Below, in pieces: positions 8,576 through 47,628 of a DNA stretch of 64,000 nucleotides; position 1 is the stretch's first letter, and each line of letters opens with the position of its first letter. The position numbers and the translations under genes were made by a program. The DNA is taken from contig OX638149.1 of NCBI GenBank assembly GCA_951804945.1, positions 59,830,001 to 59,894,000 of the forward strand, in the 5' to 3' direction. This stretch comes from Podarcis cretensis (Eukaryota). The notes under the pieces are model-generated. The model saw nothing but the letters and a program-made list of their open reading frames with translations. It did not search any database and had not been told where the DNA came from.

Positions 8576-8656
8576 CCCCACCACCTCCAAAACGGGCTCC
8601 AACCACTGCACTGACCTTGCGGTCTAAGTCAATGACCTCAGAACTTGAAGAGCTTG
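8576..8656 (+). CDS. SHANK2: SHANK2 exon (APPPPKRAPTTALTLRSKSMTSELEEL)
   Basis: aag acceptor, g|gtaaga donor, 81 nt, phase 1-1; matches the SHANK2 post-PDZ sequence. Confidence 0.96.
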
Positions 8657-9007: not shown

Positions 9008-9016
9008 TGGACAAAG
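9008..9016 (+). CDS. SHANK2: SHANK2 9-nt microexon (VDK)
   Basis: ctctcattag|TGGACAAAG|gtaagc; phase 1-1; gives ELEEL-VDK as in mammalian SHANK2. Confidence 0.88.
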
Positions 9017-12077: not shown

Positions 12078-13378
12078 TCATTGAAAGTGTATTTGTATTG
12101 TCCCTCTTCTTAATGGGTTCCTCTTCCTACTTTTCTCTGTACTCTCTCTTCTTAAACTGAACCAGCCTCCCCCCACTCCATTTTCACAGGGCCATTCATT
12201 CCCCTTGAAAGCAGTGGGGGGATGTTGGTGACTTTTATAGTGATGGGTGGGAAGCAATCAAAGAACTTTGGAGTCCATGTGGGTCTACACTTCAGTCATG
12301 AATACTTTATTTTTTTAACAATAGAAAAGCTTTGTTGCCACAGTAAATGACAACAGCCACCATTCCCCACCACCACCCTCAATAACGCCTCTAGGAATAA
12401 TACTACATCATGACACAGCATAATTCTCAGGGGGCATTCTGTACTGAATTACAAAGGAGTGTCAATGCACTGCTCAGGGCAGCCAAGCTGCCACTTGAAA
12501 CATTGGGAGAGTTTTTTTAGGGTCCTTTACAAATATCCTCTCCCATCCCAGCCTGAAGATAAGCTCACTCCCACCCTAAAGTTCTTTGATTCTGATCTTC
12601 AGGGGCGGGTGTTATTCTTCCCCACCTCGAAAGCAAAAATAGTCTGGGCTGAATGTCCAACACTACGATTTTCTTATTTGTGACCAATAATATTTCTTAC
12701 CTTGTGGTATTCCAGTGGAATGTCTTTCTTTTCTTTGAACACATGACAGTGCCCTCCTTCTTGTGAATGAATTGTTTTGTTTAAAAACTACCCCTCAGTT
12801 TTAAACCAGTTTTTCTATTCTGTGTATTAAGGGGCTGCTATTTTGGAGGAAACAGCCCATTGGGTCAAGGAACTAATTTAGTGGTTCTGTGGAGCTCATG
12901 TTCAGCTTTGTGCCCCCTGTAATATTATACGGCTGCTTCCCAATTAGTGTTGCACAAGCTCTAATTCATGTCTGCCCCTCTTTAGAATCTGCACTAAGAT
13001 TGTCAGGAACTAATGGCCTAAGAAATTGTCACAATTCTTTCCCCTTTGAATTCAAACTCTTAAAATATTCCCCGCCACCACCCCTCCACAATCATGCTGA
13101 TATTTTTTAAAGTCTAAATCATACTGTTTAGCTTTTGGGATGAGATCTTCCTTTTCGGCATAGCCATGGTATTCTGCCTTTTAGTTTGTATCTTTTGGAA
13201 TTAGAGTTTAAACATAGCCTGTGCTAGTTTTGCTAATGCTTATGGTGATTTGAAAAAGGCAAAGCATAGTACTGAGTACGCTCAGTGTTGGTGCTTGAGA
13301 CTCAAACAGGGATTTATCATTTTAGAATGACCTTCTCTTCACATTTTATTTACCATTCATTCCCTTTCTATTTTCAAG

Positions 13379-13399
13379 CTTCAGTACGGAAGAAGAAGG
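13379..13399 (+). CDS. SHANK2: SHANK2 21-nt microexon (ASVRKKK)
   Basis: ttctattttcaag|CTTCAGTACGGAAGAAGAAGG|gtaagg; phase 1-1; matches mammalian VDK-ASVRKKK-DK. Confidence 0.93.
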
Positions 13400-23799: not shown

Positions 23800-24109
23800 C
23801 TGCAAACATGGGCCTAAGTGCAGAGGAACAATTCACGGCTCCAAGAACTTTCTCAAGCGTGCTACTATGGCTGCTGCATTGCTAGCTGTATTTAATTGTA
23901 CCCAAAGAACTTTCCAGTTATCTGGCAACAAAGAAGATCATACCTACTCCTGCAATCCAGCTGTTCATATGGGGGGAAAGGAAAGAATATATAAGGAAAA
24001 GAAAGCAATCCAGTAGTGGAGATGAAAAATCTGGTGGGATCTCAAAAGGAAGGACTCTTTGAGAGCAGCACTTCCCAGGGGAGGGATCAGCTGCCAATAC
24101 AAGTGGCAG
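23800..24109 (+). pseudogene. Degenerate Myb/SANT-like exon of putative Harbinger fossil 1
   Basis: Frameshifted motifs APRTFSS..LL and VVEMK-WWDLKRK (from 24032), followed by a ggcag|gtaaga donor. Confidence 0.35.
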
Positions 24110-25058
24110 GTAAGACTCAACATGGCCATAAAGAGATAACTATTTTCAGTGAATCAATTTAAATATGTTTCTTGTAGCTGAAACCTCTGATTATTATAAG
24201 TACTGTAGCCTGTGCTCTTTCCATATACTTCCTAGAACTAAGTTGTCCTTGGTGTTTCTTCTGTAGCTTTTATATCATGAATAACTTGTAAATGGTATCC
24301 TACATTCACTGAGAAACTAGAAGCATGATAACCATGTTCAAGGAGCCAGCAGTACGCCAGCACCATGATCCTACCCAAGCATCTATGGAGCTGGTGTAGT
24401 CCTGACTTCTGGCAACATTTGACAAACATCCTGTCCAAGGCAGCTTATTCTTCAGGGCAGGGAGTAGGCAAACTACGAGTAGTGAACACAAAATTATGAG
24501 GTGTATCATGCACATGGAGGTGTCAGAACAATACACCCAGGTGTATGACACAGATGTACTAAATCACAGAAACGAAGGAGGCATCTGATCACATTGAGGA
24601 GAGGGACTGTGAGAAGTCTAACACTGCCTCTTTGCACACAACACTTTTAAAATTCAGCCAGTTGACAAATAAAATAATGTTATAGGGGAGATGCTGAAAA
24701 GAACCCAAACACACTGTCTGGGGTTTTTTGTTTTTAATTCAAAAACAACAACACTATGGAACGAAAATCCAAAAGAGCACCCGGTCCAAAAATTACCAGG
24801 CTCTTGGCACAGTCCTCTTGCTTTCCCTTTCTCCGTCTGTTTTCAAATACATCTTTATATTTGAGAACTCTGGTAGGCATGCCAGAACAAAATGCAACCA
24901 GGTAATATTGATTAAACCATTGTATAGGAAGCCACGCATCCACATACCCTATAACTCACTGTATGTCTAGAAAGAAAACGATTGAGTTAGCAGCGGTTTA
25001 AAAATACATTGTTCAGTTAGGTAGATGTAGTATGTAAGGGTGTTGGGGTCTGAAGCAG

Positions 25059-26061
25059 AGTGCAGACATGATGGTGCTGATTTCTTAACCATGGTTAAGA
25101 GAGTGGGAGTTGGTCATGCACAGATACCTTGGGTTGGATACAGGTTTGCGCAGAGCAGAATTGCACAAACTGGCAGGGTCGGCCCACCCATGAGGCAAGG
25201 TGAGGCATCTGACTCAGGCGGCAGGATCCACATGGACAGCAGATCCCAATGCAGATATTTATTCCTCCCCCCGTCCTGTTCCTGATGTAGATTTTCATTC
25301 ACCCCTCCTTCCCTGGTGGGGAGGGGACAGCCATGCAAACTGGATGTTCCCACAAGTGGAAGCTGGAACATGATTTTCAATATTTCCTTTCCTCCTGGAG
25401 CCTTCTGTGCTCTCCAAAATCTGCTCCAGAGGATTGGGGGGGATCCTCCAGAACAGCATGGATATGGGTATGGAGGGGGAGAGGGGAACTATCAAAAGTT
25501 ATCTTCCTCCTCTCACCTACGGGAGCCTCTGCAGGAATTGACTTGCTTTTGTGAATAGAAGGAGGCCTTCGATTTGTTGAACAGCAGGTCTGAATCTAAC
25601 CCTCTCTTTCCTCTGTCTCCTTTTGTCTCAGGCATTCTTTCTCCTCTCTTTCTCCTTTGAACTTTAATTATATTTATCATTACATCTGCTTTGGTTTATT
25701 TGTTCCTATTTTAAATTCATTTCAGAGTCTCACATTTTGTCTGCAATTGTATAACATGTTTTTATGTAGTGTCAGCTTATGTGCTGGTTTCCTATAGAAA
25801 GACAAATATTTTTGAGAATAATAAATAAATAATCTGCAGTGGTACTAAGCATGGTTAAAAGCTTGACTTCACTAAGCATTAATCAGGATTTGAAGCAAGG
25901 CTTCAATAAGCTGGCAAACCCTGGCAAAGCTGTTGAGCGTTAATCATGGTTAGTGTTAGCATTACGGTTAGCTCAGTAAATAACTCCTGCGTGATCTTAT
26001 GTGCAGCTTATTCCCAGTCTCTTAACCATGAGTAAAAGATCAACAGAGTTGCATCTGCACT
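25059..26061. mobile_element. Old non-autonomous DNA transposon with ~50-bp imperfect TIRs and nested GC-rich repeat fragments
   Basis: 25059-25108 (agtgcagac...catggttaagagagtggga) is an imperfect inverted repeat of 26012-26061. Confidence 0.5.
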
Positions 26062-26279
26062 GGGCATAAATAATTGCTTCATTTTCTTTTCATTATTATT
26101 ATTTCTACATCTCATTGAGTGTAACCACAAGCTAGTGATTTGTGCCCCAGTAATGAAACCAAATCTGTAGATGAAAAGTATTTAGAAGATAAATACATAA
26201 TATTGATTTTGTTTACATGTTGATCCTTGCAGTAAGGTTGTTGTATGCTCCTGGTGAAGAACTAGGCAACAATGCAAGA

Positions 26280-26640
26280 TCAAGGCACCTAATTCAAGAG
26301 AGAAGTTAACTTGATTTTAATATTTCTAGTCACATGGTGCAGAAGCGTAAGCCATTTGATCATTCAGTCCTGCTGCTGAGCAGCACAGTTTCTAGGCACA
26401 CCAGATTTCCATTGTCTCCATATTACCAAATGCACTTCTTCCACACCACCAACATAGCACTGGTGCCATCATCTTAACAACTTCCAAGTCCTGAATTTTA
26501 TCAGGCCAACTTGCAGACAGCAAGAAAATGACCTTTCAAGCAGAGCCTGATGCATATATCACAGTGATGTCAACCATTATCCCAAGTTGCCACGGTTGCT
26601 CTGCATTGAATGAAAATCAGCTTAAGGTTCTCTGTGCCCC
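26280..26640 (-). pseudogene. Degenerate PIF/Harbinger transposase remnant (fossil 1)
   Basis: Minus strand, across stops and frameshifts: FHSM...MVDI..ASGS...VE-AFG (26425-26433)...IK..LLHHVTR (26325-26345), colinear with HARBI1-type FHS/VDI.G.GS/VECAFG/LHN motifs. Confidence 0.4.
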
Positions 26641-28919
26641 ATAATAATATTAAATAAAGGCTGTAAATCCTAGTTATTAGAGATGCTTGAACTCTTTGTT
26701 GTTAATGTTGCCTCTTGATTCAGCCCCTTCATTGTTAATGGCTAGTCTAACAACCCATCTTAACCTCTTTGAATGTATTCATGATTCATAAGTATTTGAC
26801 AACAATGTCAGAATTTAAGTCCATTGATTGTTTATAAACTGTTTACTCAGTTTGTTATTTGTGTGATTGGCCACACATGCCAATCTCTCTGATTGGAAGG
26901 CTGAAGTTATTTGCTTAGGAAGACGTTGCAGCGAATAAAATGTTTCTGAGCAATAAGGATTTTTTTTTCAAGTTAGGAAACTGGATTCACCAATAAATGG
27001 CAAATGAACCATCAACATAAATAACAAACTATGCCAAAATATTATTTTATTTGTATATCAATGTTCACACATCAGCTGGGGGTGGGATAGGTTATATTTT
27101 TCAGATTATTTTATCAGGTCTACTATTTTCCATTTGGTTCTATTGTAAATGTTCAGACAAAGAGTTTTAAAATATGAAAAATGCCTGGCTTCATATGATC
27201 AATGATATCCAATAATAATAATATCCCTTCTTTAGAATGGGATGGCCAACTTCTGCATTATAAGCGGCCACTCAGTTCTCTAGATTCCGTTCCTGGAAGG
27301 GGAGTATATTTTGCTGTCCAATTGGACCTTCTCGCAACTAGTCAGAAGTTGTATTCAGCATGACCTAGGAAAAGCGGTTTCATAGTTATGGTGCATGTGT
27401 GCTGGATCATGATTTGGGCTGTTGCATTCAAAACCTGGAGATAGAATCATAGATTTGCACAGCTAACAACGTGAAAGGCTTCTCACACAACCTTTTACAA
27501 AAATAATTTCCTTTTTATATAAAATGTTATTACTAATTAAAATGTAGCAGGGAGTAAGGCAGATAAAATTATTTCCTGGGCCACATCTTGTTCGTGGGCC
27601 TCAGCTGGCCATCCCTGCTCTAGAGGTTCAGTTAGAATTTTGAAACAAACATTTGCTCACGTGGTTAAAAATATCCCTGTTTTATATGTGTACCCTAGCA
27701 GAGAATTTTGAAAAGTGGATTTTGTGGTCCTACACTATCTATCTGAGGGATATAGGAATCACTGGTTACAGCTGTCGCTGGGCTGGTGGAGCAAAGGTGG
27801 GAATTAAAGTGCAAAAGCAGCAGGTATTACATTTAAATTGTCTCGTGAAGTCCCTTTTCAAAGTATCCATGCAGTGGAAGATCCAAGGCTTGCTTGCCGC
27901 TCTGTCTCCACATCCATTTTCATAAGGAACTCATGCATATTATATACAAACAGTTTCATTCTCACTTTCCATAAACATGCAACTGGACAGTCTAAACAAA
28001 CACAAATAGGTGTGAATACTTTGAATGTGAATACGTTAATTAATAGATGGAGAAATTATTAGCACTCACAACGTAATTAATGTTGAAATTAAATATTCAG
28101 TTATATTGAATCATGAAATGTACAAGGCCCTTTAAATGAATATATGGTTGGATGGGTTCAGGATTTGGAGTGGTGAGAGAGACCATGGTTTTCTCTAGGA
28201 ACCACCCCCAACAACCCTCTCCCACTAAAATAAGATGGATGATCTCAAAGGATAAGAAATAATAAGGAACACTGTTACAAATCAGACACATATATACACC
28301 CGTGTCCCTCTGGTGCAAATACACAAATCCAAATTAAGTTCATAAGAGCAGCATGTGGTGTGTGTCAATGAGCAGGAGTGACACCTAACCAAATACAAAT
28401 TGATTTGGAGATTCTGCAAAGCAGGTGCAAATTACTTAGCACCAACCACACAGAGCAACCAGTTCACCAGGAATGATTAGTAGTAGTTACTCTTGTTTAC
28501 TAGGTAGACTTAGTGAGAATCATGCTGTTCACACACAAATCTTGCTTAAAATTGGGAAATGTACTTTGAATAAGTGATTATTATGATAATTTGAGAGGAC
28601 ATCTCAGATAAATATGAATGGGTAAATTGTCCCAGAGGCAGAAGGCTTACTTTATTTTCCCCCCCAACCTAGGACATTTTCTCATTCTTCATTAGCCTGC
28701 ATAATATATATAAATGCATAAAGTAACTGCTTAGTTAGGAAGTGCATGCAATATATAATCATTTTAAAGTGTTTGGGGATACATTTTCTTAAGAGTAGAT
28801 GTGAATTTAAATAACATACATGGACAAATGCCCTTATTTAATGCTTGACCTTTCTTTGTAAACTGCATTGTACACGTGTTATATAACTCTTTATAAAAGT
28901 ACTCAGGCAAGGAGTCAGC

Positions 28920-29292
28920 AAGGCAAGTGCAAGGGAAATATTTATCTTCAGACAAACAAAAGGCATCCTGGTGAACAATGCCATTGTGCATAATTACTTT
29001 CAGTTTAATATTAACAAAAAGGAAATGAATGCATACAGAAGACCTAAGAGACATTGTTCACAGGATAAATTTGATTGACTGCCACACAGATTTTGTGGCA
29101 ATAATTCTGGAAGGAGTTTAGGGGTGAGATGAAACGCCGGACAAAAGAGAAGATAGCAAGCAGTGCTTCAAAAGTTGCCACACAAGCCAGTGGTGGAGCA
29201 CATCTGACACCACAGGAAGCTCAGGTCGCTTGGAAAGTTGACTCAAAGTTCATCACAGAGATTTCTGACTGTGACATCACTACAATGCATAG
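28920..29292 (+). pseudogene. Disrupted Myb/SANT-like (trihelix) exon of Harbinger fossil 2
   Basis: Frameshifted ...LVNNAIVHNY...LRDIVHRINL...WKEFRGEMKRRTKEKIA...SGGAHLTPQEAQV..., resembling the Harbinger Myb-like consensus W.D(L/M)KRRTKEK...TGGG..LTP.E; ends at ag|gtgagc donor. Confidence 0.65.
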
Positions 29293-29590
29293 GTGAGCTT
29301 TTTGCTAGGTTCACAGACATTTACTGTCACAATCACAATAAGGTGTATTGAAAGATGTTCTTTGGGATCCAGTACAGTTGTATGTGTTATGGGTGCAGCA
29401 CCGTGTGCATTTTATGAAGTGCCACCTGCACTTTTCAGTCTCTAAATTTTAGTCTGCCCAACTATTTGCCCAAACACAAACACTCTGGTTTCCCAACTGG
29501 CTTCTTTCTGTGTGTTGTCCGATGTATGTAGATTCCTCCATCTGCCTGGCCTCAGATACAGTGGTTGTTGCTCCTCTATTTGATTGCCAG

Positions 29591-30447
29591 ATGTCACTGG
29601 GCAGCAAGATGGGGAGGTTCCTGGATCTTCTGGACAGCCCAGGCACCAGAGAGGAAGTTCACCATCCACACCTGCAGAAGAGCAAGAATCTTCAGTGCCA
29701 GCTTCTGATGAAGATTCACCAGCCAGAACTACAGAGAGTTGGCCATGGCCATTGTCATCATCTGAAACACACAGCAACCTGGGGGAAGATTTTGAGGGAT
29801 TTCCAACACCAGAGCGGACTCCGCGGTGTACAATGGACATACAATCTCCTGGGGATCAGTCTCTCAGTAGGACTCCCCAATATGAGAGTGACTCTCCTGT
29901 GGAGGGAAATGATGAAATGAACGAAGAGCACCATGGTGTTCAGCCTGTCCCTAGGGATCGGGGTTGGAGAGGGCAAACTCAGCTGACAGAGGGAGAGAGG
30001 TTATTAATGGAAACCAATAGTAGGATTGTACAGCTGCTGGAAAATATCAAGAGGGAGCATGCACAGTCTATGGGTCTCATGTCCCAGTCCATGGGCCGGA
30101 TGGAGCTGCAGCTAGGCATTGTGGCTACATCCACAAGAGCCATCCATAACTACCTGTCTGAGATTTTAGCTTTCCTCAAACAACCAAGGACACAGGTCCT
30201 TGAAACACGTATCTCCCAAAGAGCCACCCCTCATGTTGAGTTAACGAGTGCCTCAACGTGGACTGGTGAGGATGCAGTGGCAATGCCCACTGGATACTTA
30301 CCAAGGGATGAAGGGATTAATGACTCTCAAGAAACACTGCAAGCCACACTGCCTCGTCGCAGTGGCCGAATGCAGAGAGCCATAACAGAAAGGGCCTCGT
30401 TGCCCATGCCCATGCGCCAAGCAAAGGGGGGAGGGAAGAAAAAATAA
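29591..30447 (+). CDS. Intact 285-codon terminal exon of a Harbinger Myb-like gene; candidate alternative last exon of SHANK2
   Basis: Stop-free frame (ORF 29584-30447); ttgccag| acceptor in phase 1; acidic S/P-rich region, heptad-like helix and basic C-terminus RRSGR...KGGGKKK; lies between a Myb-like exon and a convergent transposase. Confidence 0.6.
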
Positions 30448-30899
30448 TTTATCACACTAGTGATAGTATTTTTAAGGGTTTTTTTTAATGTGCCTGTCCT
30501 TTTAATTCTTAGCCATAAGGCCATGAGTGGCAGAACTTGACCATTTTTACATTTGGCTAACATTGTATTCTGGCTGACTAGATTAATCTTACATTTTGTA
30601 GTTTATATTTGCATTGTTAACAATGTGTGCTACTGGTATTTGAAGAACATTTGCTTCTGTTCTTTCACTTCAGCTTCATGAGAGCATTTTTTTACACTGT
30701 GCCAGACATTCATTGCTTTTCTTACAAATACAAATCATTTCTGGACACAGTTGTTTTTTGAGTTTTCTTTTTCCATTATCCCCCCTTCCCCCTTTCCCTC
30801 TGAGCAAGCATTCTGGAGTTTTTGGTAAGTATGTGGGTCTTGGCAATATTCGCCTCAGAAATTGTGTTCGATCAGTCTTTGCCTGGTGTTTCTGGCATG

Positions 30900-31900
30900 C
30901 TGGCCTGAGGTGTTGGGATTAGCCTGTAAGTGCCTTTTTTGATAATAATCTTATCCTCTGTGGGTCTGACCAGATTAATCTCTTGCCTATTTTGTGGAAA
31001 TTACATATCTTGGCTGGGTTGTGTAATAAGCAACATGCCAGGACTATATTGCAGCATTTGTGACTTGTACAAAAACTGTGCCAGCAAACCTATCTAGGCA
31101 CATGAACTACACTTTCAAAAGCTCCTTCCTTGTTGAACTGATGGTTTGGCGAGCAACATTGTTATCCCATGGGGAGATTTAGAAACAGAGGAAAATAGCA
31201 ATGCATTTATTATATGTGAATCACATAAAGAAATATCATAGGAGAAACTATCCCTAATACTATCACAGACACTTACAGATCAAAGCAATCACCTTCCTTG
31301 TAGCCAGACCTTCTCAGAATTTAAGAGTCATAACACGCTGTTGCGTTCTGTGCCACAATGTCTAAATAACAGCTTTGCATTGCAGATGATATGAAAATCT
31401 CTCCTCTTCCTTTAGGCCACCTCATTTACTGATGCTAAGAGTGGTCCTAGCACACTAGGCAGATAACTAATGCACATGGGTTGGAGAGCATTTTTATTAC
31501 TGTTGGGTCTGCCTCTGTGAGGGTTGGTTAAAAAGCGGGACACAAAAGCATCTAGATGCATCTAAGGAATACAGAGTGGCTTCTGAGTGGTACTCAAGAT
31601 CATCCTGTTTTCACCACCAAACTGGGTTGTGTGGTCGCCACCACTGTTACAGGCACAGTGTAGGGCCTGCTTCACTTTCCAGTTTCACTTTGGAGCTAAA
31701 TTCCCTAAAGAGCATATTTGTGAGAGCATATTTATCAAGCCCATATCTAAATCCAAGTTTGTGGCTGTATCTAAACAGGCTGTGGGCCATCTCTTCCACC
31801 TACTCTTGTTTCAGACGGAAGAAAACCTGAGAGCAAGAAGCATTTTGCTGCAGTACAAACCAGCCATAATATGCTTCTTAGTGAAATATTTGCTTGTGGC
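30900..31900 (-). pseudogene. Degenerate PIF/Harbinger (HARBI1-like DDE) transposase, fossil 2
   Basis: Minus strand: FRYGLDK (~31740); RK..DFHIICNAKLL-LDIVAQ...YDS*ILRRS then a gtaagt donor at 31276-31271; LLKV*FMCLDRFAG (31121-31080); CCNIVLACCLLHNP (31056-31016). Matches HARBI1-family GLLK.RFRCLD..G...C.I..ACC.LHN. Several stops and frameshifts. Confidence 0.8.
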
Positions 31901-32139
31901 TGCTTTTTGCTAAGTGACTGGGCTAATGGTGAAATGCAGCTAGTGTGGGCTAACCCCTCATGCAGGCACAACGTACGGTTCAGGTATCTGTCCTGAGAGA
32001 TGAGCTGTCATGGGTGTGCTGTCTTGACCATAAACTCTAAATGCACCCGGTCTGTCAGGGATGACCTTTCACACCTGCATACCACTTGTGCCCCATCTGT
32101 GCCTGTTTTATTTCTTGTTTGTTTGTTAAACATAATATA

Positions 32140-32299
32140 CCGTATTTTTCCGTCTACAAGACGCCTCCATGTATAAGACTATTTTGGGGGACTCAGATTT
32201 AAGAAAATGGGGGGAGATGGCCCCATGTATAAGACGCCCCCTCATTTTTGACATTATTTTTTAGGAAAAAAACCTAGTCTTATACACGGAAAAATATGG
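32140..32299. mobile_element. Tc1/mariner-type MITE
   Basis: TIRs CCGTATTTTTCCGT... / ...ACGGAAAAATATGG flanked by TA on both sides. Confidence 0.8.
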
Positions 32300-32984
32300 T
32301 ATATATAGATGCCTTTATAAATAAATACATTTCAAATTGAAGCATGTAAGAATCATGATGCAAGAATACACATTCTTACAAAATTACATTAAAAAACAAC
32401 AACCAAGGGGAAGTGTCACAAGCAAGTATGAAACGCAAGTCCAGTCCAATGGATTTTGTTAAGGTTCCAATGTAGCTTTCAAAGTCCTAAACAAAAACAA
32501 GCTGCAGAACTCTTTGAAAATTAGCCTTTTATTAATATGTTTGAAAAGCGAAATACATGGAGTTCCACAAACATCCTGAGATCATCCTAGATCTACAATA
32601 TAATGAAGATGTGTTTATTTGCATTATGTCACTCTAAAAGTGTGATGGAATTGGGGAGGGGGGTATTCAGAATTTGACAAATATACTACAGTTCAAACAT
32701 AACCATTGTTGGAAAGTCCAGATTTCCTCCCTAAATTTAATACATTTAATTCATTGGGTTATACTGCATCCCAACTTCAGTATGCGATTAAAACAAAATC
32801 AGCACAAAATTCATTCTTTGCAGTAATATACAAAGCGCCCTCCCCATTCCAACTTGTTTCAGCTATCTGTGATTAGAAAGGGTTGCAATACCTGCCATTT
32901 GAGTGGAAAAAGCTGTAGGGCAAGGAAAAATGAGCTGACAATAATAAGATCAACAAAAGATAGAGTTTCCCACTAACCTAATGT

Positions 32985-35070: not shown

Positions 35071-35710
35071 GAGAATTAGCCCTGAGATATTAATTGCCAG
35101 GCTTATAGCAAAGTTTCTAATGAAGATTTGAAACTTGACTCATTGGACCTAAGTATGATTCATTTAACATTTAGAAGTCCATAGAAAATTAAGTATTTGC
35201 ATATTTAAGAGACTTTAAAAAGTGCTGTTATAGCAGTGCCAAATCGTTTTGTCTAATAGCCTGACATCAGGAATAGGTTACAAAGTAATAGCATAAAGAG
35301 CACTTAAAAATACCTATTATTGTCTAAAATTTCATTAGCATTCTAGTGATTACTGTGTGGAATAGTGCTCTAGAGGTGTAAAATTTCTAAAGGTTTTCTT
35401 TCCATTTCTATATAGATATTTTCCCTTCACATTTTGAAGGTTTGAAGAAGAGGATTGTTTTTCGAGTCACACTAAGTAAACATTAAATGCATGCAGGCTT
35501 AAAACTAAAGCATGCATGTTACGCAGCAGCAATAAAAGTGCTCGGCTTGCACGACTTACGATGCTGAAGCATTGCCTTGTTAAATTGCCAAAATCCCCTT
35601 TTTATTTGCATCTTTAAAAAAAGTTAAACTCTTAATTTCACATTGCATTATTTAGATTTTCAGTCTTTGGACAAATTAGATTTATTTTAGCAAATATTTC
35701 TGTGTTACAG

Positions 35711-35841
35711 ATAAAGTTGATGAAATAGTACCAGTTTCCAAGCCATCAAGAATTCCAGACAATGCAGCCGTGGACTCAAGAGTGGCAACAATTAAACAAC
35801 GACCTTCCAGCAGATGCTTTCCCTCGGCTACAGATATGAAT
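35711..35841 (+). CDS. SHANK2: SHANK2 exon (DKVDEIVPVSKPSR...TIKQRPSSRCFPSATDMN)
   Basis: ttacag| acceptor, |gtgagt donor, 131 nt, phase 1 to 0; homologous to SHANK2 DKPEEIVPASKPSR...RVATIKQRPSSRCFP. Confidence 0.96.
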
Positions 35842-36332
35842 GTGAGTAAATGTACTTAAGAGTTCTGATATTTTGACTAAATTAAGATCTTTCCAGATTC
35901 CTAATAGTAGAGGATAATCCTCCAAGCTTTCCTTTTCTTTTTGCACACTTATCCTTAATTCTTCTGACTTGTGCCCATGATCACCTTCTGGAATGACACT
36001 CCTCACTGTAACGGCTTAAGATTTATTTCCTAGGAAAATTTACTTGGAAGTTAGTCCCATTGAAGTAAATGAGAGGAACCTCTATAAGTGTGATATATTC
36101 ATGTTCTGTAAAATTACACCTTTGTTATACCATATTCTTGAAATGGATCCATAGCAATGGTATATTCAAATGCCCTTTTAATGGCTAACTTCCAAAGTTT
36201 GAAATCAACATCAAAACCTTCCTCATGATTTATTGTAATGGTGCAATGGGACTGTATCTAGATATGAAATAGATCTAAATATTGAATCAGATCTTGTCCA
36301 AGAATCACACATAATGAACTTAAATGGCTTCC

Positions 36333-41177: not shown

Positions 41178-41825
41178 CAGTGGCAGACGAAGCCGCTCGG
41201 GCACCTAGAGCGGCAAACATGACATGCACCTGGGGGTGAGGCGTCACTACGTAGCACACATGTGCAGCGTAGCTACGTACGACGCATGCGCCGTATATAG
41301 TGGCGCCACACAGGGGGACTACATAGTGGTTTGCCGGCGGCGTGGTGCTGGGATCCTCTGCTCACGGCTGCAGCCACAAACGGAGGATCCTCTACATGCG
41401 ACTGCAGCCACAAGCAGAGGATCCCAGCACTGCACCGCCGGCAAACCGCTACATAGCACACATGTGTGGCATCGCTACGTACGTGGTTTGCCGGCGGCGC
41501 AGAATCGGGATTCTCCTCGCGGCTACAGCTGCAGGTGGAGGATCCTCTACATGCAGCTGCAGCCACGAGCAGAGGATCCTGGCACCATGCTGCTGGCAAA
41601 TTGCTACGTAGCGCACATGTGCACAAGCGTGTTACATAGCAGTTTTCCGGTGGCGCGGTGCTGGAACCCTCTGCTCGCAGCTGCAGCCGCATGTAGAGGA
41701 TCCTCCATTCGCGGCTGCGACGGCGTAATGGCTGCTTGCGCCGCCTTCTCACCGCCAGAGATATGGCACTGGGAGCACACCGCCCCGCCCCCCCTGCCCC
41801 CCCGCCCCCCGTTGTGACGCCAATG
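41178..41825. mobile_element. hAT-like non-autonomous element with internal inverted and tandem GC-rich units
   Basis: Termini CAGTGGC... / ...GCCAATG; 8-bp TSD aggccagt/aggccaat (7/8); repeated gaggatcctctacatgc and ctacgta units in both orientations. Confidence 0.7.
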
Positions 41826-43506
41826 AGGCCAATGTCTGTCAGTAACATTGACTGAATATTACAACTGGAATTTGTGCTCTTTGAAATATACAATTTCTTA
41901 AGTAATTCATTGCTTTTTAGCTTGTTTGTTTCAAATATTTATTTACTGCTTAATATCAGAATTTCTTAGCATACAAAATGCATTTATAAATTACAAAATT
42001 AATAAGTAACGAAGTAACCAACAGCAGACAATCTCTATAAAGTATGGTAAAATCAAAACCAAATTTAATACACATTTAAATTTTATGTTTATTGAATCAA
42101 AAGCATCACTTTTGCACATTTGAAAATGTTTTAGCATTCTGATTTCCATGTGTAGAATTTTGTTTATATCACAACGCCAAATTCATACTACAAAAAGAAT
42201 TTTTTAAAAGACTATATTGGTAAAAGTTACTCAGAGGTTAGTTTTAAATGAAATCATTCTTCTTTGCTAAAATTGTGTTTTTATAATCTGTGTGTATGTG
42301 ATAAGATGGTATTTTTGTTCAAAATAATGACAGAAAGCTTTAGGAAAATATATATTAATTGGTCCATTTTGCTGTAGAAGTAGTTGGTTGTACAATGAGG
42401 AAGTTAAACAGAGTCAACATATGCTTTATGGAAATGTATTTTTCTGCAAAATGATGTTGTTTTAGTCATATTGGAAACTTAGTCAAAGGTCTTATTCCCC
42501 ACAATTTCAATTGCTATTCTTGCTGTAATAGCAATGGCAAGCAAAAACCAAAAAGATACATTTAACACCAAACTTTAATTAGAGCAGGTTGCAATATGGG
42601 AGTTAAAGCTGAGAGGCAACGTTTTTCTTGTCCTTTCTTCTCCTTTATGTTTGAAGGGATATTCTGTTCCCTGGTGAAATAATGAAGTTATTCTTTGCAA
42701 CTCTCTACATAAAAATAGTTACAGGAAATACAGTGAAAGAAATGTATATTATCAACTATTACAAGGAATAGCAATCAGCCCATAGCTTAGATCGACCCTT
42801 TTGCTGCTGTTGTTTCATCCTGAACACAAACCAGCAAGCCAGCTATATTAATTATTACTTCAGAGACTGTCTGTGTAAGGAGAGCATCTCTTTGCTCTGT
42901 CTGTACCAGGAAGTACCACAAGTAGCTTGTGAAGCCATTGCCTCATGCTGTGACCTGCCCTGGTTAGTGCTTCACGTCTAGCTTTCCAGCATGAAATCTA
43001 GCACCTCATACAACAGGTAGCAATCTCACTCCAAAGTTACATATGTTTGTTTGGGAGGTTGTTTCACAATGCCTCTCTATCCACTCTCTTTACCCATGTA
43101 GAAACATTGTTTTATCATGTTTCATGCATGGCCACCTATTCACAAATGCCAACATGCATACATTTATTTATTTTTAAGCTTTCCTTTCCTTTCTTCTTCC
43201 AGTCTTTCACAGCTTTTGGCTGACAACTTCCTTTCATGCACAGTTCATAAAAAACATTACTTTAGGGATGCACAATTCTCTGTGCAGATATATGTAAGAA
43301 AATGCTGGAAGATCAGCATAGGGACACTGAGGCAAGCAAAAATGTAAAGTGAAGATCTAGTTGCAGACATATTCTAAAACCAAACCATGCATAGTAATAT
43401 ATAATACAGTATTTTCTGTACCTGGTTTACTATGTCTTTGGTGACAATGGATGATAATTAAAATTCAAGAGCAATTTAAAAATTGTAGCTTGTGATTTTT
43501 TTAAAG

Positions 43507-45922
43507 GGATAACAGAGGAAGAACGGCAATTTTTGGCTCCTCCCATGCTAAAATTTACCAGAAGTCTATCCATGCCAGACACCTCTGAAGATATCCCTCC
43601 TCCTCCACAGTCTTTACCTCCATCACCACCACCTCCATCTCCTTCTCTTTACAACTCCCCCAAATCTCCAGTGTCTAGAATATATGGGACAATTAAGCCT
43701 GCATTTAATCAGAATTCAGGTGCAAAGTTAGCTATTTCAGGTAGATCTGAAAATATGGGAACGGTGATAAGGGACAAAGGGATATATTACCGGAGAGAGA
43801 TGGACCGTTATTCTCTAGATTCTGAGGACTTATATAGCAGAAATGCCTCAACTCAGGCAAGCTTCAGAAACAAGAGAGGTCAGATGCCGGAGAACCCATA
43901 CTCTGAAGTTGGAAAAATAGCAAGCAAAGCAGTGTATGTCCCAGCCAAGCCAGCAAGACGGAAGGGAATGCTAGTGAAACAATCTAATGTTGAGGATAGT
44001 CCAGAAAAAACCTGCTCTATTCCAATTCCAACTATCATTGTTAAAGAGCCATCTACCAGCAGTAGTGGGAAAAGTAGTCAAGGAAGCAGCATGGAAATTG
44101 ACCCACAGTCTTCAGAGCAACCAGGACAGCTCAGACCTGAAGATAACTTGACTGTCAGTAGTCCATTTGCAGCAGCCATTGCAGGGGCAGTGAGGGATAG
44201 GGAAAAAAGATTAGAAGCCAGGCGTAACTCTCCAGCTTTCCTTTCCACAGATTTGGGAGATGAGGATGTTGGGCTATCGCCTCCAATGCCACGTTTGAGA
44301 CAGTCTAAGTTTAGTGATGAGGGAATGTTTGGTAATGAAGACAACTTTAGGCAACTTGTATCACCATCTCCTATCCCAGCACCTAGAGAGCCTGAAAATA
44401 TTTTTAATAGCAGTGAAACAAGTAATCAAAGTGATGCAAGGACACCAAACCCTTCAACCCCAACATCAATGGGTTCAGAAAATAATGTGTTGGCAACTCA
44501 GAATGCTGGTATGTCCAGTTTGGATAACTATGTTCATCCACTCACAGGGAAATTACTGGATCCAAATTCACCTTTAGCCCTTGCCCTTTCTGCCAGAGAT
44601 AGAGCCATGAAGGAACAAACCCAGCAAATTCCAGGGAAAGGAGAATCTGGCAAAGCAGACCTTAATAAACCCCTTTATATAGATACAAAGATGAGGTCCA
44701 ACATCGAAACTACATTTCCAGTGACAGCTACAATTGCTAGGCAAAATACGCGTGGTCCACTAAGGCGGCAGGAGACGGAGAACAAATATGAGACAGATAT
44801 GGGGAAAGAGAGGAGGCCTGAAGAAAAGAAGAACATGCTGATCAATATTGTGGATACCTCACAGCAGAAGTCAGCTGGTTTGCTCATGGTTCATACGGTA
44901 GATACAGCGCAGTCCAATGATACCCCTGATGAAAAGGAAGAGGAAAGTGCTGAGATAGATGTGGATACCGAAAAGCCTCCACCAGAGGCACAGGAAAGTA
45001 CAGAAACAGCTGAAAGTGGACTAGATGAAGCTGACATGCCTGAGCTACCTGCATCTCCCTGCAAAACTATTGTAGCAGTTGGCTCCGTTGATGATCCAAT
45101 CATTTTACCATTCCGTATCCCTCCACCCCCTTTAGCATCTGTTGATCTTGATGAAGATTTCATCTTTACTGAGCCATTACCACCGCCTTTAGAATTTGCT
45201 AACAGTTTTGATATCCCTGATGACCATTCTGTCCCAGGCTCTGCACTAACAGACTTGCTCAAACACAGAAAAAATGGAACTCCGCCTGCTTCATTCAATC
45301 CTACTCAACCCTCAAATTCAATAGACAGTAAGAAACCAGTGGGTCTTTCAAACTGTTTGCCTGCCTCATTTTTACCACCGCCTGAAAATTTTGATAACGT
45401 CACTGACTCTGGGATTGAAGAGGTGGACAGTCGAAGCAGTAGTGACCATCACCTAGAGACAACCAGCACTATCTCAACTGTGTCCAGCATCTCTACCTTA
45501 TCCTCTGAAGGTGGTGAGAACTTGGATACTTGTACAGTCTATGCAGATGGGCAAACATTTCTGGTGGACAAACCCCCAGTACCTCCTAAGCCAAAAATGA
45601 AGCCCATAATCAACAAAAGCAATGCACTTTACAAGGATGCGCTAATTGAAGAAACTGTAGATAGTTTTGTTATTCCTCCACCTGCCCCACCCCCACCTCC
45701 TATCAGCGCACAGCCCGGTATGGCTAAAGTTGTACAGCAAAGGACCTCTAAGCTATGGGGTGATGTAACGGAGGTTAAAAGCCCAGTTCTCTCAGGCCCA
45801 AAGGCTAATGTCATTAGTGAATTGAACTCAATACTGCAGCAAATGAACAGAGAGAAATCATCAAAGCCAGGGGAAGGATTGGAGTCACCTCCAGGAATAA
45901 AAACAGCAAGTCTTAGTACAAG
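43507..45922 (+). CDS. SHANK2: SHANK2 large proline-rich exon (Homer-binding PPPLEF 45180-45197; cortactin SH3-binding KPPVPPKP 45570-45593)
   Basis: ttttttaaag| acceptor giving GITEEERQFLAPPMLKFTRSLSMPD; 797-aa ORF; ag|gtaaat donor; 2416 nt, phase 1 to 2. Confidence 0.98.
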
Positions 45923-47628
45923 GTAAATGCAACTAAATTATTTTTTAAGTCTATAGTGTCCATAAGTTTAAATTGCCTTTGCTTTCATTAATAATGTCTT
46001 AAATACTTTTTAATCTTATGTTTAAAATTCATGGTATTAATGCTCCAGTATTAATTTTTGACGCTCTTAAAAATCTACAAAATACGTTAATTGCTATTAT
46101 CATTTTTCACCTTTGCCCTTATTTGTTTATGATATTAACACGTATTGAAATATGCTATCTTTTACTATGCTGCTAGTTAAGAATCAATTTCACCTCTCCT
46201 TTCTAGAATCCCTAGTTATGTGTTTTATGGTTTACCCCTAACTTCTCCACATTTAATGAAAAGGTTTCAAAGTGGCTCTAAGTGACAGCTGACTGGTTAT
46301 AGTTCTGATTTAATTTCAAGTTGATATTGCTTCAGTAGTAGCTGTCTTATTTAGAATGTGTTGAGTAGTTTTGTGTGTTTTATTTTGCATGGTACATATG
46401 TTTAGTTTACAATGCAGAGGGCTACATGTGGCGCTGCATGTATTTGCCAAGGTTTTCGTCTCCCTGCTGCAATCCATTACAACCTCCAACAAAGCACTCC
46501 TGAGAATCCAGTTGGAGGTGCAAGGAAAGAGAGAAATCAGCAGTCCCACATGCAAATGTAGAAGTGTTTTCTGCTCACACCTTTGGATCCCAGCCAGAAT
46601 CTCTCTATGCTTTTTTAGTAAATGAAATAAAAATCTGTCCTTTATTTGATAACAAATATTCCAATGCAACTTTAGAAAAAACCAAAAGTGACACATTTAA
46701 TCTCAAAAATATTTATTTTATTGCATGGACTTCAGCACATGCAATCAAGGAGATGCACTAATGGACCATATTCTGGTTTCATTTTTTAAAATCAAGTTTC
46801 CTGCTGGATCATGCCAGTGGCCCATTTGGTCTAGCATCTAGTTCTCAAACTGTGCACATTCAGTTGTTCCAGTAAAGCGATCAACGTACATTAATGATTC
46901 GTTGTTTGAGCTGTTTGGTTTTAATTGTTGGAAGAAGAGTAGTCACAAAGCCTGTCCTTTAGTCTTTTCTAGGGTGGCCAGAGACAAAGGATACAAGGGC
47001 TTTTGCACCTCTCTCAATTGTGGAATTTTGTTGTGTGCATCTTATCATGCAGGGGTGAAAGCAGCTGCACTTTCAAAAATTTCATTTTCTACACAGCTAT
47101 TAAAAATGTGAGAGTTCTGTCATCCTCTCATCTTCATCAGAGCATACAACTGCCATGGTGAATAATACATTACTTTTTAAAAACTTTTTTAACAAAAATG
47201 TTCTCCATGGTGGTAGTATATGGTGAGGGTCAGCATTTGCATCCTATCTTGAACCACCCTGCCTTACAGCCAGTACCACTGAAAGACTGCATTTGACAGA
47301 CATATTTTAAAAGTCAATATTGTGAAATTTATTGAGCCTTTGGATGGATTTGTTGCACTTGCTGTGATAGGTTCTAGGACTTTCAACTGAAGGTGGCGAC
47401 CCATGGTAGTGGAACAGTAGAGTGGTGTAAGAAACCCCAAACTCTGAATGTACCATTTTTTACCTGTTGTTGAATGTGCCTATTTTTACCTGTTGTTAGC
47501 CGCTCTGAGCCCGGCTTTGGCTGGGGAGGGTAAGATACAAATAAAAAAATAATATTATTATTACCAGGACCTGTTTCCTAGCAAAGTTCAAGCTTCAGCT
47601 ACATGGGGACAGGTTTTATGTGGTAGAG

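What the first reader, a model, noticed from the sequence alone, without database searches (positions are those of the whole stretch)
29591..30447. Harbinger-derived exon kept open and in frame with SHANK2: candidate exapted alternative C-terminus
Seen: (1) an unbroken 285-codon frame, while the adjacent Myb-domain exon (28920-29292) and the convergent transposase (30900-31900) of the same element have multiple stops and frameshifts. (2) Its acceptor ctcctctatttgattgccag|AT is phase 1. That does not fit the element's own upstream donor (29292, phase 2 in the MKRRTKEK frame), but it fits SHANK2 donors 8656/9016/13399, giving ...ASVRKKK-DVTGQQDGEVPGSS.... (3) The product has an acidic S/P-rich linker, a heptad-like helix (LLMETNSRIVQLLENIKREHAQSMGLMSQSMGRMELQLGIVATSTRAIHNYLSEILAFLK) and a basic end (RRSGR...KGGGKKK). 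The nearest AATAAA I found is at ~32320. Inference: selection has retained only this exon, making a SHANK2-transposon chimera that keeps the N-terminal domains through PDZ but swaps the Homer/cortactin sites and SAM for a coiled coil and a possible NLS. It could act as a dominant-negative or nuclear scaffold. Alternative: an independent nested gene.
Basis: partly seen in the sequence, partly recalled or inferred. Interest (0 to 1): 0.9.

Follow-up and report, generated by a model that had tools for sequence, protein, structure and literature searches.

The report
Conserved transposon-derived coding exon inside SHANK2
An open reading frame inside a SHANK2 intron is a real protein-coding exon, kept almost unchanged in lizards, turtles, crocodiles and birds; it probably descends from a Harbinger transposon accessory gene and is made as a small separate protein and/or as a new tail on a shortened SHANK2.

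Summary
Window 29591-30447 (+) is an unbroken 285-codon frame with a phase-1 acceptor. It is longer than any open stretch in 200 shuffles of the intron (287 vs at most 205).

It is not a young transposon copy open by chance. Orthologues at 88-96 % amino-acid identity occur in a monitor lizard, sea turtles, a crocodile and more than 30 birds. About 100 residues are invariant. Against a collinear bird contig (L001), dN/dS is 0.11, with 17/18/78 differences by codon position. The 81 codons before the first in-frame Met give 0.06, so translation must start in an upstream exon.

Three upstream sources appear in public gene models:
- A small dedicated exon with its own ATG (window 24022-24109, phase 1), used in bird LOC models.
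- The SHANK2 post-PDZ exon (donor 8656), used in chicken and turkey models.
- The ASVRKKK micro-exon (donor 13399), used in a crocodile model.

I could not confirm any junction with reads. Four RNA runs of a related species gave zero reads.

A Harbinger origin is plausible: a decayed Myb-like exon lies upstream and a collinear transposase motif series lies on the opposite strand. Pfam did not confirm either.

The product is mostly disordered, with one invariant 63-residue helix. No paper describes it.

The parts
29591..30447 (+). Conserved 285-codon coding exon. The first codon is completed by the last G of a phase-1 donor. Stop is TAA at 30445-30447; the first in-frame ATG is at 29833 (M82).
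29989..30177 (+). Codes residues 134-196, a single long amphipathic helix with 3-4 hydrophobic spacing. It is invariant in all 11 aligned sauropsid sequences. dN/dS is 0.026 for codons 135-220.
29440..29590 (+). Intron flank with the polypyrimidine tract and acceptor AG. It is 92 % identical to the bird with no indels, and includes a run of more than 100 identical bases. An in-frame TGA lies at 29581-29583.
30448..30930 (+). Conserved 3'UTR, 89 % identical to the bird. It holds AATACA at 30727 followed by a conserved U-rich stretch (candidate poly(A) site, inferred) and a conserved GGTAAGTAT at 30823.
24022..24109 (+). Small upstream exon with an in-frame ATG and donor GCAG|GTAAGA in phase 1. 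It codes MKNLVGSQKEGLFESSTSQGRDQLPIQVA, the counterpart of the first exon of the bird LOC models (MVGFQKEGFLKSSTSQGRDQLPVQVA).
29121..29292 (+). Tail of the decayed Myb/SANT-like exon (..WKEFRGEMKRRTKEK..SGGAHLTPQE..). It is conserved as DNA (81 %), but in the bird it has indels not divisible by three and ATG changed to GTG. The donor ATAG|GTGAGC is conserved. It may now be a non-coding 5' exon (inferred).
28920..29120 (+). N-terminal half of the Myb/SANT-like exon. It has several stops and is not conserved (58 %). The bird copy still reads ..LFSEDDEILVSNAL.*.YLLFGEK..
30950..31800 (-). Decayed PIF/Harbinger-type transposase remnant. It carries collinear motif relics across shifting frames: an HTH-like stretch at 31778-31698, GGDHTTQF at 31642, ILRRSGYKEG at 31320, FSYDIS..INALLF at 31246 and IVLACCLLHN at 31047.
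   Evidence: read by eye against family motifs recalled from memory; Atlas lead to PF04827/PF13359; Pfam negative on pieces
8590..8656 (+). SHANK2 exon ..KRAPTTALTLRSKSMTSELEEL with a phase-1 donor. It is joined directly to the exon in the chicken and turkey models.
13378..13399 (+). SHANK2 micro-exon ASVRKKK with a phase-1 donor. It is joined to the exon in the crocodile model.
9008..9016 (+). SHANK2 micro-exon VDK, phase-1 donor.
35711..35841 (+). Next canonical SHANK2 exon (D)KVDEIVPVSKPS.., whose acceptor also starts with ..cag|AT. It bounds the 22-kb intron that holds the exon.

Best explanation
This is a real, old protein-coding exon, present in the common ancestor of lizards, turtles, crocodilians and birds.

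Origin (inferred). It is most likely the large 3' exon of the Myb-like accessory gene of a PIF/Harbinger transposon that landed in the 22-kb SHANK2 intron between the ASVRKKK micro-exon and the next exon. The transposase gene and the DNA-binding Myb exon then decayed. The 3' exon, its acceptor region and its 3'UTR were kept.

How it is read (shown and inferred). The 81 conserved codons at its start contain no ATG, and a TGA sits just before the acceptor. The exon can therefore only be read after phase-1 splicing from an upstream coding exon.
- I take the main product to be a stand-alone nested gene of about 313 aa: exon 24022-24109 with its own ATG, joined to 29591-30447.
- All SHANK2 exons just upstream are also phase 1, so SHANK2 transcripts can end in the same exon. 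That would give a shortened SHANK2 that keeps the PDZ domain but loses the proline-rich region and the SAM domain.
- Whether that second product is selected or is a by-product is open.

Protein. It has a disordered acidic Ser/Pro-rich part, one invariant 63-residue amphipathic helix and a conserved basic end.

Mechanism (inferred). In other Harbinger accessory proteins (NAIF1, HDP2, ALP2, Ping ORF1) the C-terminal part binds the nuclease partner. By analogy I propose that the helix is a protein-binding module: an adaptor without a DNA-binding domain.
For: Real and selected.
- Orthologues at 88-96 % identity with 100 % coverage occur in Varanus, Crocodylus, sea turtles and birds from ostrich to passerines.
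- About 100 consecutive residues are invariant.
- The bird contig L001 is collinear with the window from 23977 to 45808, including SHANK2 exons, so the copies are orthologous.
- dN 0.057, dS 0.54, ratio 0.107. Differences by codon position are 17/18/78. The ratio is 0.064 for the 80 codons before the first Met.

Splicing needed. A TGA lies at 29581-29583 and there is no ATG before M82.

Nested gene.
- The upstream exon has an in-frame ATG and a phase-1 donor in both squamate and bird, 78.6 % identical over 159 nt.
- A cluster of 53 bird protein models uses it.

SHANK2 joining.
- The phases fit.
- Chicken, turkey and crocodile models carry the junction.

Origin.
- A decayed Myb/SANT-like exon lies directly upstream. 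It is better preserved in the bird (FSEDDEILVSNAL.. / ..RRRTKAKIA.. / SGGAHLAPQE).
- A collinear transposase motif series lies on the opposite strand.
- All named Atlas neighbours of the ACCLLHN piece carry PF04827 or PF13359.

Fold. AlphaFold2 gives a helix at 134-196 with pLDDT 75-92 and the rest below 50.

Precedent. The C-terminal part of Harbinger accessory proteins binds the nuclease. ALP2 is mostly disordered with a C-terminal coiled coil (PMC7282668).
Against: - No read-level proof of any junction. Four RNA runs of a related species gave zero reads on 23950-29949. Tissue is unknown and only about 12 % of each run was read.
- No profile support for the Harbinger origin. Pfam found nothing on the exon, the Myb pieces or the transposase pieces in the window or the bird.
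- An exhaustive HMMER search of 1.84 billion representatives found no relative outside its own cluster. The one other hit, P0039, is tandem-repeat junk.
- In L001 the upstream exon has one extra C that breaks the phase. This may be an assembly error.
- Its coding constraint cannot be measured well: 25 codons, about 5 replacement and 4-5 silent differences, counted by eye.
- Gnomon models can be propagated between birds by homology, so 53 models are not 53 independent observations.
- The helix-as-binding-module step is analogy only.
Confidence: 0.55

Rival explanations
1. One reading: the selected function is an alternative C-terminus of SHANK2. Splicing from a post-PDZ exon into 29591, followed by intronic polyadenylation, gives a SHANK2 that keeps ANK/SH3/PDZ (or PDZ alone) and swaps the Homer/cortactin sites and SAM domain for the disordered region plus helix. 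The bird 'LOC' models are then a minor or mis-split transcript.
For: - All three nearby SHANK2 donors and the acceptor are phase 1.
- Chicken and turkey models join SELEEL to DVTGEQ. The crocodile Gnomon model joins ASVRKKK to DVTGEQ.
- The 150 nt before the acceptor are 92 % identical between bird and lizard, as is usual for regulated alternative exons.
- The next canonical SHANK2 exon begins with the same ..cag|AT.
Against: - A dedicated upstream exon with its own ATG is conserved between squamate and bird. It has no other known use.
- NCBI annotates the exon as a separate gene in more than 30 birds.
- A search with the chicken fusion junction found no further fusion cluster, none from transcript assemblies.
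- No reads were obtained.
- Highly conserved intron flanks are common in this locus anyway; for example about 350 nt lie before the exon at 35711.
Confidence: 0.3
2. The exon is an old host exon or gene that was never part of a transposon. The Myb-like and transposase-like relics beside it are chance resemblances or an unrelated neighbouring insertion.
For: - No Pfam or HMMER link between the exon and any Harbinger protein.
- No Pfam hit on any Myb or transposase piece.
- The old exon's donor (phase 2) does not fit the acceptor (phase 1) in the present sequence.
Against: - The Myb-like relic lies on the same strand directly upstream, ends in a conserved GT donor 298 nt before the acceptor, and reads as a Myb/SANT-like domain in the bird.
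- Seven transposase-like relics lie in the right order over about 850 nt on the opposite strand.
- The Atlas neighbours are all PIF/Harbinger families.
- A two-exon layout, Myb exon plus large 3' exon, is what I recall for such accessory genes, for example NAIF1 (from my own knowledge).
Confidence: 0.2
3. Conservation reflects a non-coding function, such as an ultraconserved enhancer or RNA element in the SHANK2 intron. The open frame is incidental.
For: - The non-coding flanks (K 0.08 and 0.12) are more conserved than the silent sites of the exon (pS 0.38).
- Many small libraries of unknown type from several relatives hold this stretch. That could mean it is a capture target (my guess).
Against: - Differences are concentrated on third codon positions (17/18/78) and dN/dS is 0.11.
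- The only indel in the exon is 6 nt.
- The frame is open in every lineage sampled.
- The other two frames carry 6-20 stops.
- No Rfam family matches.
Confidence: 0.03
4. A young Harbinger copy whose accessory-gene exon is still open by chance.
For: None beyond the open frame itself.
Against: - It is single, syntenic and orthologous in squamates, turtles, crocodilians and birds.
- Its neighbours have decayed to 58-62 % identity, while the exon stays at 87 %.
Confidence: 0.01

Closest known systems
ALP2 of Arabidopsis (domesticated Harbinger accessory protein; PMC7282668)
   Same: - Derived from the Myb-like accessory gene of a PIF/Harbinger element.
- Described as predominantly disordered and rich in charged residues, with a helical or coiled-coil stretch near the C-terminus.
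- Works, or here is proposed to work, through protein binding by its C-terminal part.
   Different: - ALP2 is a plant gene and is not nested in or spliced to a host gene.
- Its similarity to Harbinger accessory proteins is visible in alignments. Here no sequence similarity was detectable.
- Its partners (ALP1, MSI1) are known. Here no partner is known.
NAIF1 and MSANTD1-4 (vertebrate genes derived from Harbinger Myb-like genes; PMC9392472)
   Same: - Vertebrate domestication of the same kind of transposon gene.
- Single-copy, syntenic and under purifying selection.
- NAIF1 binds the transposase-derived HARBI1.
   Different: - Those genes keep the Myb/trihelix DNA-binding domain, are found in jawed vertebrates or sarcopterygians, and are stand-alone genes.
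- Here the Myb exon is dead and only the non-DNA-binding 3' exon survives.
- Distribution, as far as protein databases show, is sauropsids only.
- The locus is not in that paper's list; 'SHANK2' occurs 0 times in it.
Host-transposase fusion genes formed by alternative splicing to a transposon exon (from my own knowledge; Cosby et al. 2021, not read here)
   Same: A transposon exon inside a host intron is captured through a phase-compatible acceptor, giving a chimeric protein with host N-terminal domains.
   Different: - As I recall them, the described cases capture the transposase DNA-binding domain and give transcription factors.
- Here the captured piece comes from the accessory gene and has no DNA-binding domain.
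- The host is a synaptic scaffold.
- The fusion is so far only a gene model.
Canonical SHANK2 C-terminal half (proline-rich region with Homer and cortactin sites, SAM domain)
   Same: It occupies the same position after the PDZ domain in the fused models, and the exon begins with the same Asp codon split (G|AT) as the canonical next exon at 35711.
   Different: There is no sequence relation. The big canonical exon lies at 43533-45926 in the window. The new tail has no SAM domain and no proline-rich motifs of that kind.

Membership tests
Domesticated PIF/Harbinger accessory (Myb-like) gene | Detectable homology of the protein to Harbinger Myb-like proteins (Myb/SANT/trihelix domain, e.g. PF13873) | tested here: not met
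   - No Pfam hit on the 285 aa, in the window or the bird.
- No relative outside its own cluster among 1.84 billion representatives.
- No PDB relative.
- The surviving exon lies outside the Myb domain, so this failure was expected.
Domesticated PIF/Harbinger accessory (Myb-like) gene | Physical descent from a Harbinger element: a Myb-like exon upstream in the same transcription unit | tested here: inconclusive
   - Read by eye, the motifs run FSEDDEILV.. / LFG / ..W..RRRTKAK.. / SGGA.L.PQE.
- The exon's GT donor is conserved.
- Pfam found nothing on the stop-free pieces.
- A read-through search with X at the breaks was not run, because no reference form exists for it.
Domesticated PIF/Harbinger accessory (Myb-like) gene | Companion DDE transposase (PF13359/PF04827) in the same element | tested here: inconclusive
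   - Seven collinear motif relics lie on the minus strand at 31778-30950, including ..SGY.., FSY..S....INA.. and ACCLLHN.
- Atlas named neighbours all carry PF04827 or PF13359 at 0.89-0.92, which is a lead only.
- Pfam was negative on 10 window pieces and 5 bird pieces.
- The word search found no candidate.
Domesticated PIF/Harbinger accessory (Myb-like) gene | Single orthologous locus under purifying selection across distant species | tested here: met
   - Collinear with the bird contig over 22 kb.
- dN/dS 0.107.
- Present in squamates, turtles, crocodilians and birds.
Domesticated PIF/Harbinger accessory (Myb-like) gene | Binds a transposase-derived partner (e.g. HARBI1) through its C-terminal part | not testable with these tools
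   No animal reference protein could be supplied to complex prediction. This needs co-immunoprecipitation or two-hybrid assays.
Host gene-transposon exon fusion (SHANK2 chimera) | Phase-compatible donor and acceptor on the same strand | tested here: met
   Donors 8656, 9016 and 13399 and acceptor 29590/29591 are all phase 1.
Host gene-transposon exon fusion (SHANK2 chimera) | Transcripts that join host exons to the transposon exon | tested here: inconclusive
   - Public models exist: chicken P0030, turkey P0029 and crocodile P0026.
- The Varanus model P0021 has extra doubtful exons.
- Reads: none laid on the exon in 4 RNA runs of a relative.
- No further fusion clusters were found.
Independent nested gene | Own first exon with a start codon, conserved and spliced in frame | tested here: met
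   - Window 24022-24109 has an ATG and a phase-1 donor, and is orthologous to the bird first exon.
- Caveat: its promoter and its actual use in squamates were not shown.
Coiled-coil oligomerisation domain | Heptad pattern and self-association | tested here: inconclusive
   - AlphaFold2 predicts a single helix at 134-196.
- I read a 3-4 hydrophobic spacing at M161, M164, M168, M171, L175, V178, T182, I185, L189, I192 and L196 from the sequence.
- No coiled-coil predictor was available.

The most novel reading that the evidence does not exclude
In sauropsid neurons SHANK2 has a regulated second C-terminus of transposon origin. Splicing after the PDZ domain into this exon replaces the Homer/cortactin/SAM scaffold half with a disordered acidic region and an invariant helix. 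That helix still binds a Harbinger-transposase-derived protein such as HARBI1, or another nuclear partner. This would link a postsynaptic PDZ scaffold to a nuclear or chromatin factor. The same exon is also expressed alone from its own promoter as a competitor.
Probability: 0.12. Interest if true: 0.85.

Novelty: new member of a known kind. Interest (0 to 1): 0.62.

Why it matters
It adds a seventh candidate to the six Harbinger-derived vertebrate genes listed in PMC9392472 (HARBI1, NAIF1, MSANTD1-4). It is an unusual one, because only the half without the DNA-binding domain was kept. Its sequence has hardly changed across the lizard-bird split (about 280 million years, from my own knowledge).

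It sits inside SHANK2, a major synaptic scaffold and autism gene. It is phase-compatible with SHANK2's post-PDZ exons, and gene models in three species already join the two. It is therefore a concrete, testable case of a host gene possibly capturing a transposon accessory-protein exon.

Databases call it only 'uncharacterized protein LOC...' or list it as a SHANK2 isoform. I found no paper on it. The invariant 63-residue helix is a clear handle for partner hunting.

Because it appears absent from annotated mammalian proteins, its direct biomedical weight is limited.

Tried and rejected
Synteny and DNA-level tests therefore rest on one bird contig, recovered from a metagenome (L001). Scans of genome contigs and viral contigs found no further copies.
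- Read laying used 4 RNA runs of a related species on 23950-29949. There were zero reads on the upstream exon or on the first 359 nt of the exon. Only a repeat at 25150-25350 was covered. This is uninformative: tissue is unknown, the species differs, and about 12 % of each run was read. No run on record as RNA holds the stretch.
- Complex prediction on two copies of residues 120-215 gave no verdict (score 0.11, mark 0.32). This is neither for nor against self-association.
- Pfam on the exon gave only a sub-threshold BCDHK_Adom3 hit at E 0.04. Pfam on the Myb and transposase pieces gave nothing.
- The Atlas search on the exon returned only unnamed chordate clusters at 0.80-0.82. The PDB sequence search gave nothing. 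Rfam gave only a sub-threshold bacterial sRNA hit at 35349.
- P0039 (E 7e-11) is a 1936-aa tandem-repeat translation. I rejected it as spurious.
- The word search with the 56-aa ACCLLHN piece found no candidates.
- The search with the chicken fusion junction found no new fusion clusters. Its table listed some human and primate SHANK2 entries, which I did not fetch or use.
- Literature searches for SHANK2 with Harbinger, for host-transposase fusion, and for six LOC ids found nothing relevant.
- Steps left out. I built and searched no joined (spliced) model of the window's own exons; exons were handled by reference one at a time. I made no read-through of the broken Myb or transposase frames with X at the breaks, for lack of a reference form. 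I looked at no mammalian or human sequence at the syntenic site.
Full report
**1. The observation**

The frame is there. The ORF listing gives 29584..30447 (+), 287 aa. The 285 codons that follow the acceptor ...ctcctctatttgattgccag|AT are unbroken and end at TAA 30445-30447.
- An in-frame TGA lies at 29581-29583, and the first in-frame ATG is codon 82 (29833).
- The longest open stretch in the intronic part of the window (14000-35000) is this one, at 287 codons. Two hundred shuffles gave a mean of 123 and a maximum of 205.
- The window holds SHANK2 on the + strand. PDZ exons lie near 4.6 kb, the next canonical exon at 35711-35841, and the large exon at 43533-45926.
- The frame therefore lies in a 22-kb SHANK2 intron, in the sense orientation.

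**2. It is not a young transposon copy; it is a conserved coding exon**

A protein search found orthologues at 88-96 % identity over the full length. Their clusters hold the following:
- Models from more than 30 birds, from ostrich to passerines.
- Crocodylus porosus.
- Two sea turtles.
- Varanus komodoensis.

In an alignment of 11 sequences, about 100 consecutive residues (LLMETNS...TPHVELT) are invariant.

One bird contig recovered from a metagenome, L001, supplied DNA. L001 is collinear with the window from 23977 to 45808, including SHANK2 exons, so the copies are orthologous.

Over 285 codons, window against L001:

| Measure | Value |
|---|---|
| dN | 0.057 |
| dS | 0.54 |
| dN/dS, whole exon | 0.107 |
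| Differences at codon positions 1/2/3 | 17/18/78 |
| Indels | one, of 6 nt |
| dN/dS, helix core (codons 135-220) | 0.026 |
| dN/dS, first 80 codons | 0.064 |

The first 80 codons precede any ATG. Those codons are therefore translated, which requires splicing from an upstream coding exon in phase 1.

**3. What else is conserved**

Identity to the bird, by segment:

| Segment | Coordinates | Identity |
|---|---|---|
| N-half of the old Myb exon | 28920-29120 | 58 % |
| Tail of the old Myb exon | 29121-29292 | 81 % |
| Intron, 5' part | 29293-29439 | 77 % |
| Intron, last 150 nt before the acceptor | 29440-29590 | 92 %, no indel |
| The exon | 29591-30447 | 87 % |
| 3'UTR | 30448-30930 | 89 % |
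| Beyond the 3'UTR | 30931-31500 | 62 % |

- The tail of the old exon is not coding in the bird. It has indels not divisible by three, and ATG is changed to GTG. Its donor ATAG|GTGAGC is kept.
- There is no AATAAA before 32320. A conserved AATACA at 30727, followed by a conserved U-rich stretch, is a plausible poly(A) site (inferred). A conserved GGTAAGTAT sits at 30823.

**4. Which upstream exon feeds it**

Public models give three answers.
- (a) Bird Gnomon 'uncharacterized protein LOC...' models of 312-313 aa start MVGFQKEGFLKSSTSQGRDQLPVQVA|DVTG.
  - This first exon maps to L001 5552-5620 and to window 24022-24109. There it reads MKNLVGSQKEGLFESSTSQGRDQLPIQVA, with an in-frame ATG and donor GCAG|GTAAGA in phase 1.
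  - The ATG sits at a different codon in bird and squamate, but both lineages have one.
  - L001 itself has one extra C near the end of this exon. That may be an assembly error.
- (b) Chicken (P0030, UniRef A0A8V0ZZV9, named SHANK2) and turkey (P0029) models join ...SELEEL|DVTGEQ. This is PDZ followed directly by this exon.

Shorter models of 204-206 aa (sea turtles, starling, sparrow) start at M82. That would fit transcripts with a non-coding 5' exon, such as the conserved relic ending at 29292 (inference).

I could not add read evidence.
- No run on record as RNA holds the stretch.
- Four RNA runs of a related species laid on 23950-29949 gave no reads on either exon.
- A search with the chicken junction region found no further fusion clusters.
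- I built no joined model of the window's own exons.

**5. Origin**

- Upstream, in the MKRRTKEK frame, the window reads ..WKEFRGEMKRRTKEK..SGGAHLTPQE.., preceded by several stops.
- The bird copy is better preserved. One frame with two stops reads ..LFSEDDEILVSNALR*RYLLFGEKNKK..*..QQWFGRE..RRRTKAKIASSAS. After a frameshift it reads SASGGAHLAPQEAQ.
- To my reading, from memory of PF13873-type domains, this is a Myb/SANT-like domain.
- The minus strand carries seven relics in the order expected for a PIF/Harbinger DDE transposase, across shifting frames: an HTH-like stretch at 31778-31698, GGDHTTQF at 31642, LEYHS..YSLD at 31598, ILRRSGYKEG at 31320, FSYDISLCDSHIINALLF at 31246, IVLACCLLHN at 31047 and LVRPTEDK at 30973.
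- The ESM Atlas neighbours of the ACCLLHN piece that carry a family all carry PF04827 or PF13359, at scores of 0.89-0.92. This is a lead only.

Against this:
- Pfam found nothing on any stop-free piece in the window or the bird.
- The exon itself has no Pfam hit.
- It has no relative outside its own cluster among 1.84 billion representatives. The one extra hit is tandem-repeat junk.
- It has no PDB relative and no named Atlas neighbour.

I put the Harbinger origin at about 0.7-0.8.

**6. The protein and a mechanism**

AlphaFold2 with the shallow alignment gives one long helix at 134-196 (pLDDT 75-92) and a short one at 201-211. Everything else is below 50.
- The helix has a 3-4 hydrophobic spacing: M161, M164, M168, M171, L175, V178, T182, I185, L189, I192, L196 (read from the sequence).
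- The N-part is acidic and Ser/Pro-rich, with conserved aromatic-acidic patches (ESWxWPL, GEDFEGF).
- The end..RQAKGGGKKK, is invariant.
- A homodimer prediction gave no verdict.

For Harbinger accessory proteins and their domesticated descendants (NAIF1, HDP2, ALP2, Ping ORF1), the C-terminal part binds the nuclease partner. ALP2 is described as mostly disordered with a C-terminal coiled coil (PMC7282668).

I therefore propose that the kept exon is a protein-binding adaptor module. This is an inference by analogy.
- Made alone, it would be a 313-aa adaptor.
- Joined to SHANK2, it would give a PDZ-bearing protein without the Homer, cortactin and SAM parts.

**7. Comparison with what is known**

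The vertebrate Harbinger-derived genes listed in PMC9392472 are HARBI1, NAIF1 and MSANTD1-4.
- All MSANTD genes and NAIF1 keep the Myb domain.
- SHANK2 is not mentioned in that paper.
- No paper was found for six LOC identifiers from five birds and the crocodile, or for SHANK2 with Harbinger.

The locus is thus annotated but uncharacterised. I class it as a new member of a known kind: a domesticated transposon gene and possible host-transposon fusion. Its unusual trait is that only the non-DNA-binding half survived.

I examined only the central one.

**8. Verdict**

Selection on the exon is shown. The SHANK2 chimera exists as gene models in three species but is unverified by reads. A nested gene with its own first exon is at least as well supported.
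- Interest is 0.62.

Noticed in passing
window 35358-35847: A block 88 % identical to the bird. Only 35711-35841 is the SHANK2 exon (D)KVDEIVPVSKPS..DMN. The roughly 350 nt of intron before it are just as conserved, so deep intron-flank conservation is a feature of several alternative exons in this locus.
   Followed up: partly
window 13327-13399: An ATG at 13327 reads in frame through the acceptor into the ASVRKKK micro-exon (MTFSSHFIYHSFPFYFQ|ASVRKKK). The crocodile model P0026 starts at the matching Met (MGLPSELIHSSFPFYFQ|ASVRKKK). This may be chance within a conserved polypyrimidine tract, or an alternative start.
   Followed up: no
window 25150-25350: This was the only part of 23950-29949 covered by RNA reads of the related species. 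Reads were 88-95 % alike with unlike sequence on both sides, which suggests a dispersed repeat (SINE-like) expressed from many loci.
   Followed up: no
window 32135-32304: A small foldback element: 28-nt inverted arms, 89 % complementary and 114 nt apart, with an internal 21-nt direct repeat (CCATGTATAAGAC). It looks like a MITE.
   Followed up: no
window 30823-30831: GGTAAGTAT, a consensus 5' splice-site-like sequence, is conserved between squamate and bird inside the 3'UTR, about 95 nt after the candidate poly(A) signal. Its meaning is unknown; it could be a U1 site or a further splice.
   Followed up: no
window 26748-26796 and 27849-28037: Two further short blocks are conserved with the bird (84 % and 80 %), lie between the upstream exon and the old Myb exon, and have no open frame. 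Their function is unknown.
   Followed up: no
window 41224-41893: Overlapping ORFs of 197 aa (+) and 206 aa (-) carry internally repeated motifs (..RILYMRLQP..AEDP..). This is probably a repeat or palindromic element in the intron before the large SHANK2 exon.
   Followed up: no
window 29591-29920: A second frame opens with ATG exactly at the acceptor (29591) and runs 110 codons. In the ORF region the other two frames carry 10 and 20 stops in the window and 6 and 19 in the bird, so this second frame does not look conserved.
   Followed up: partly
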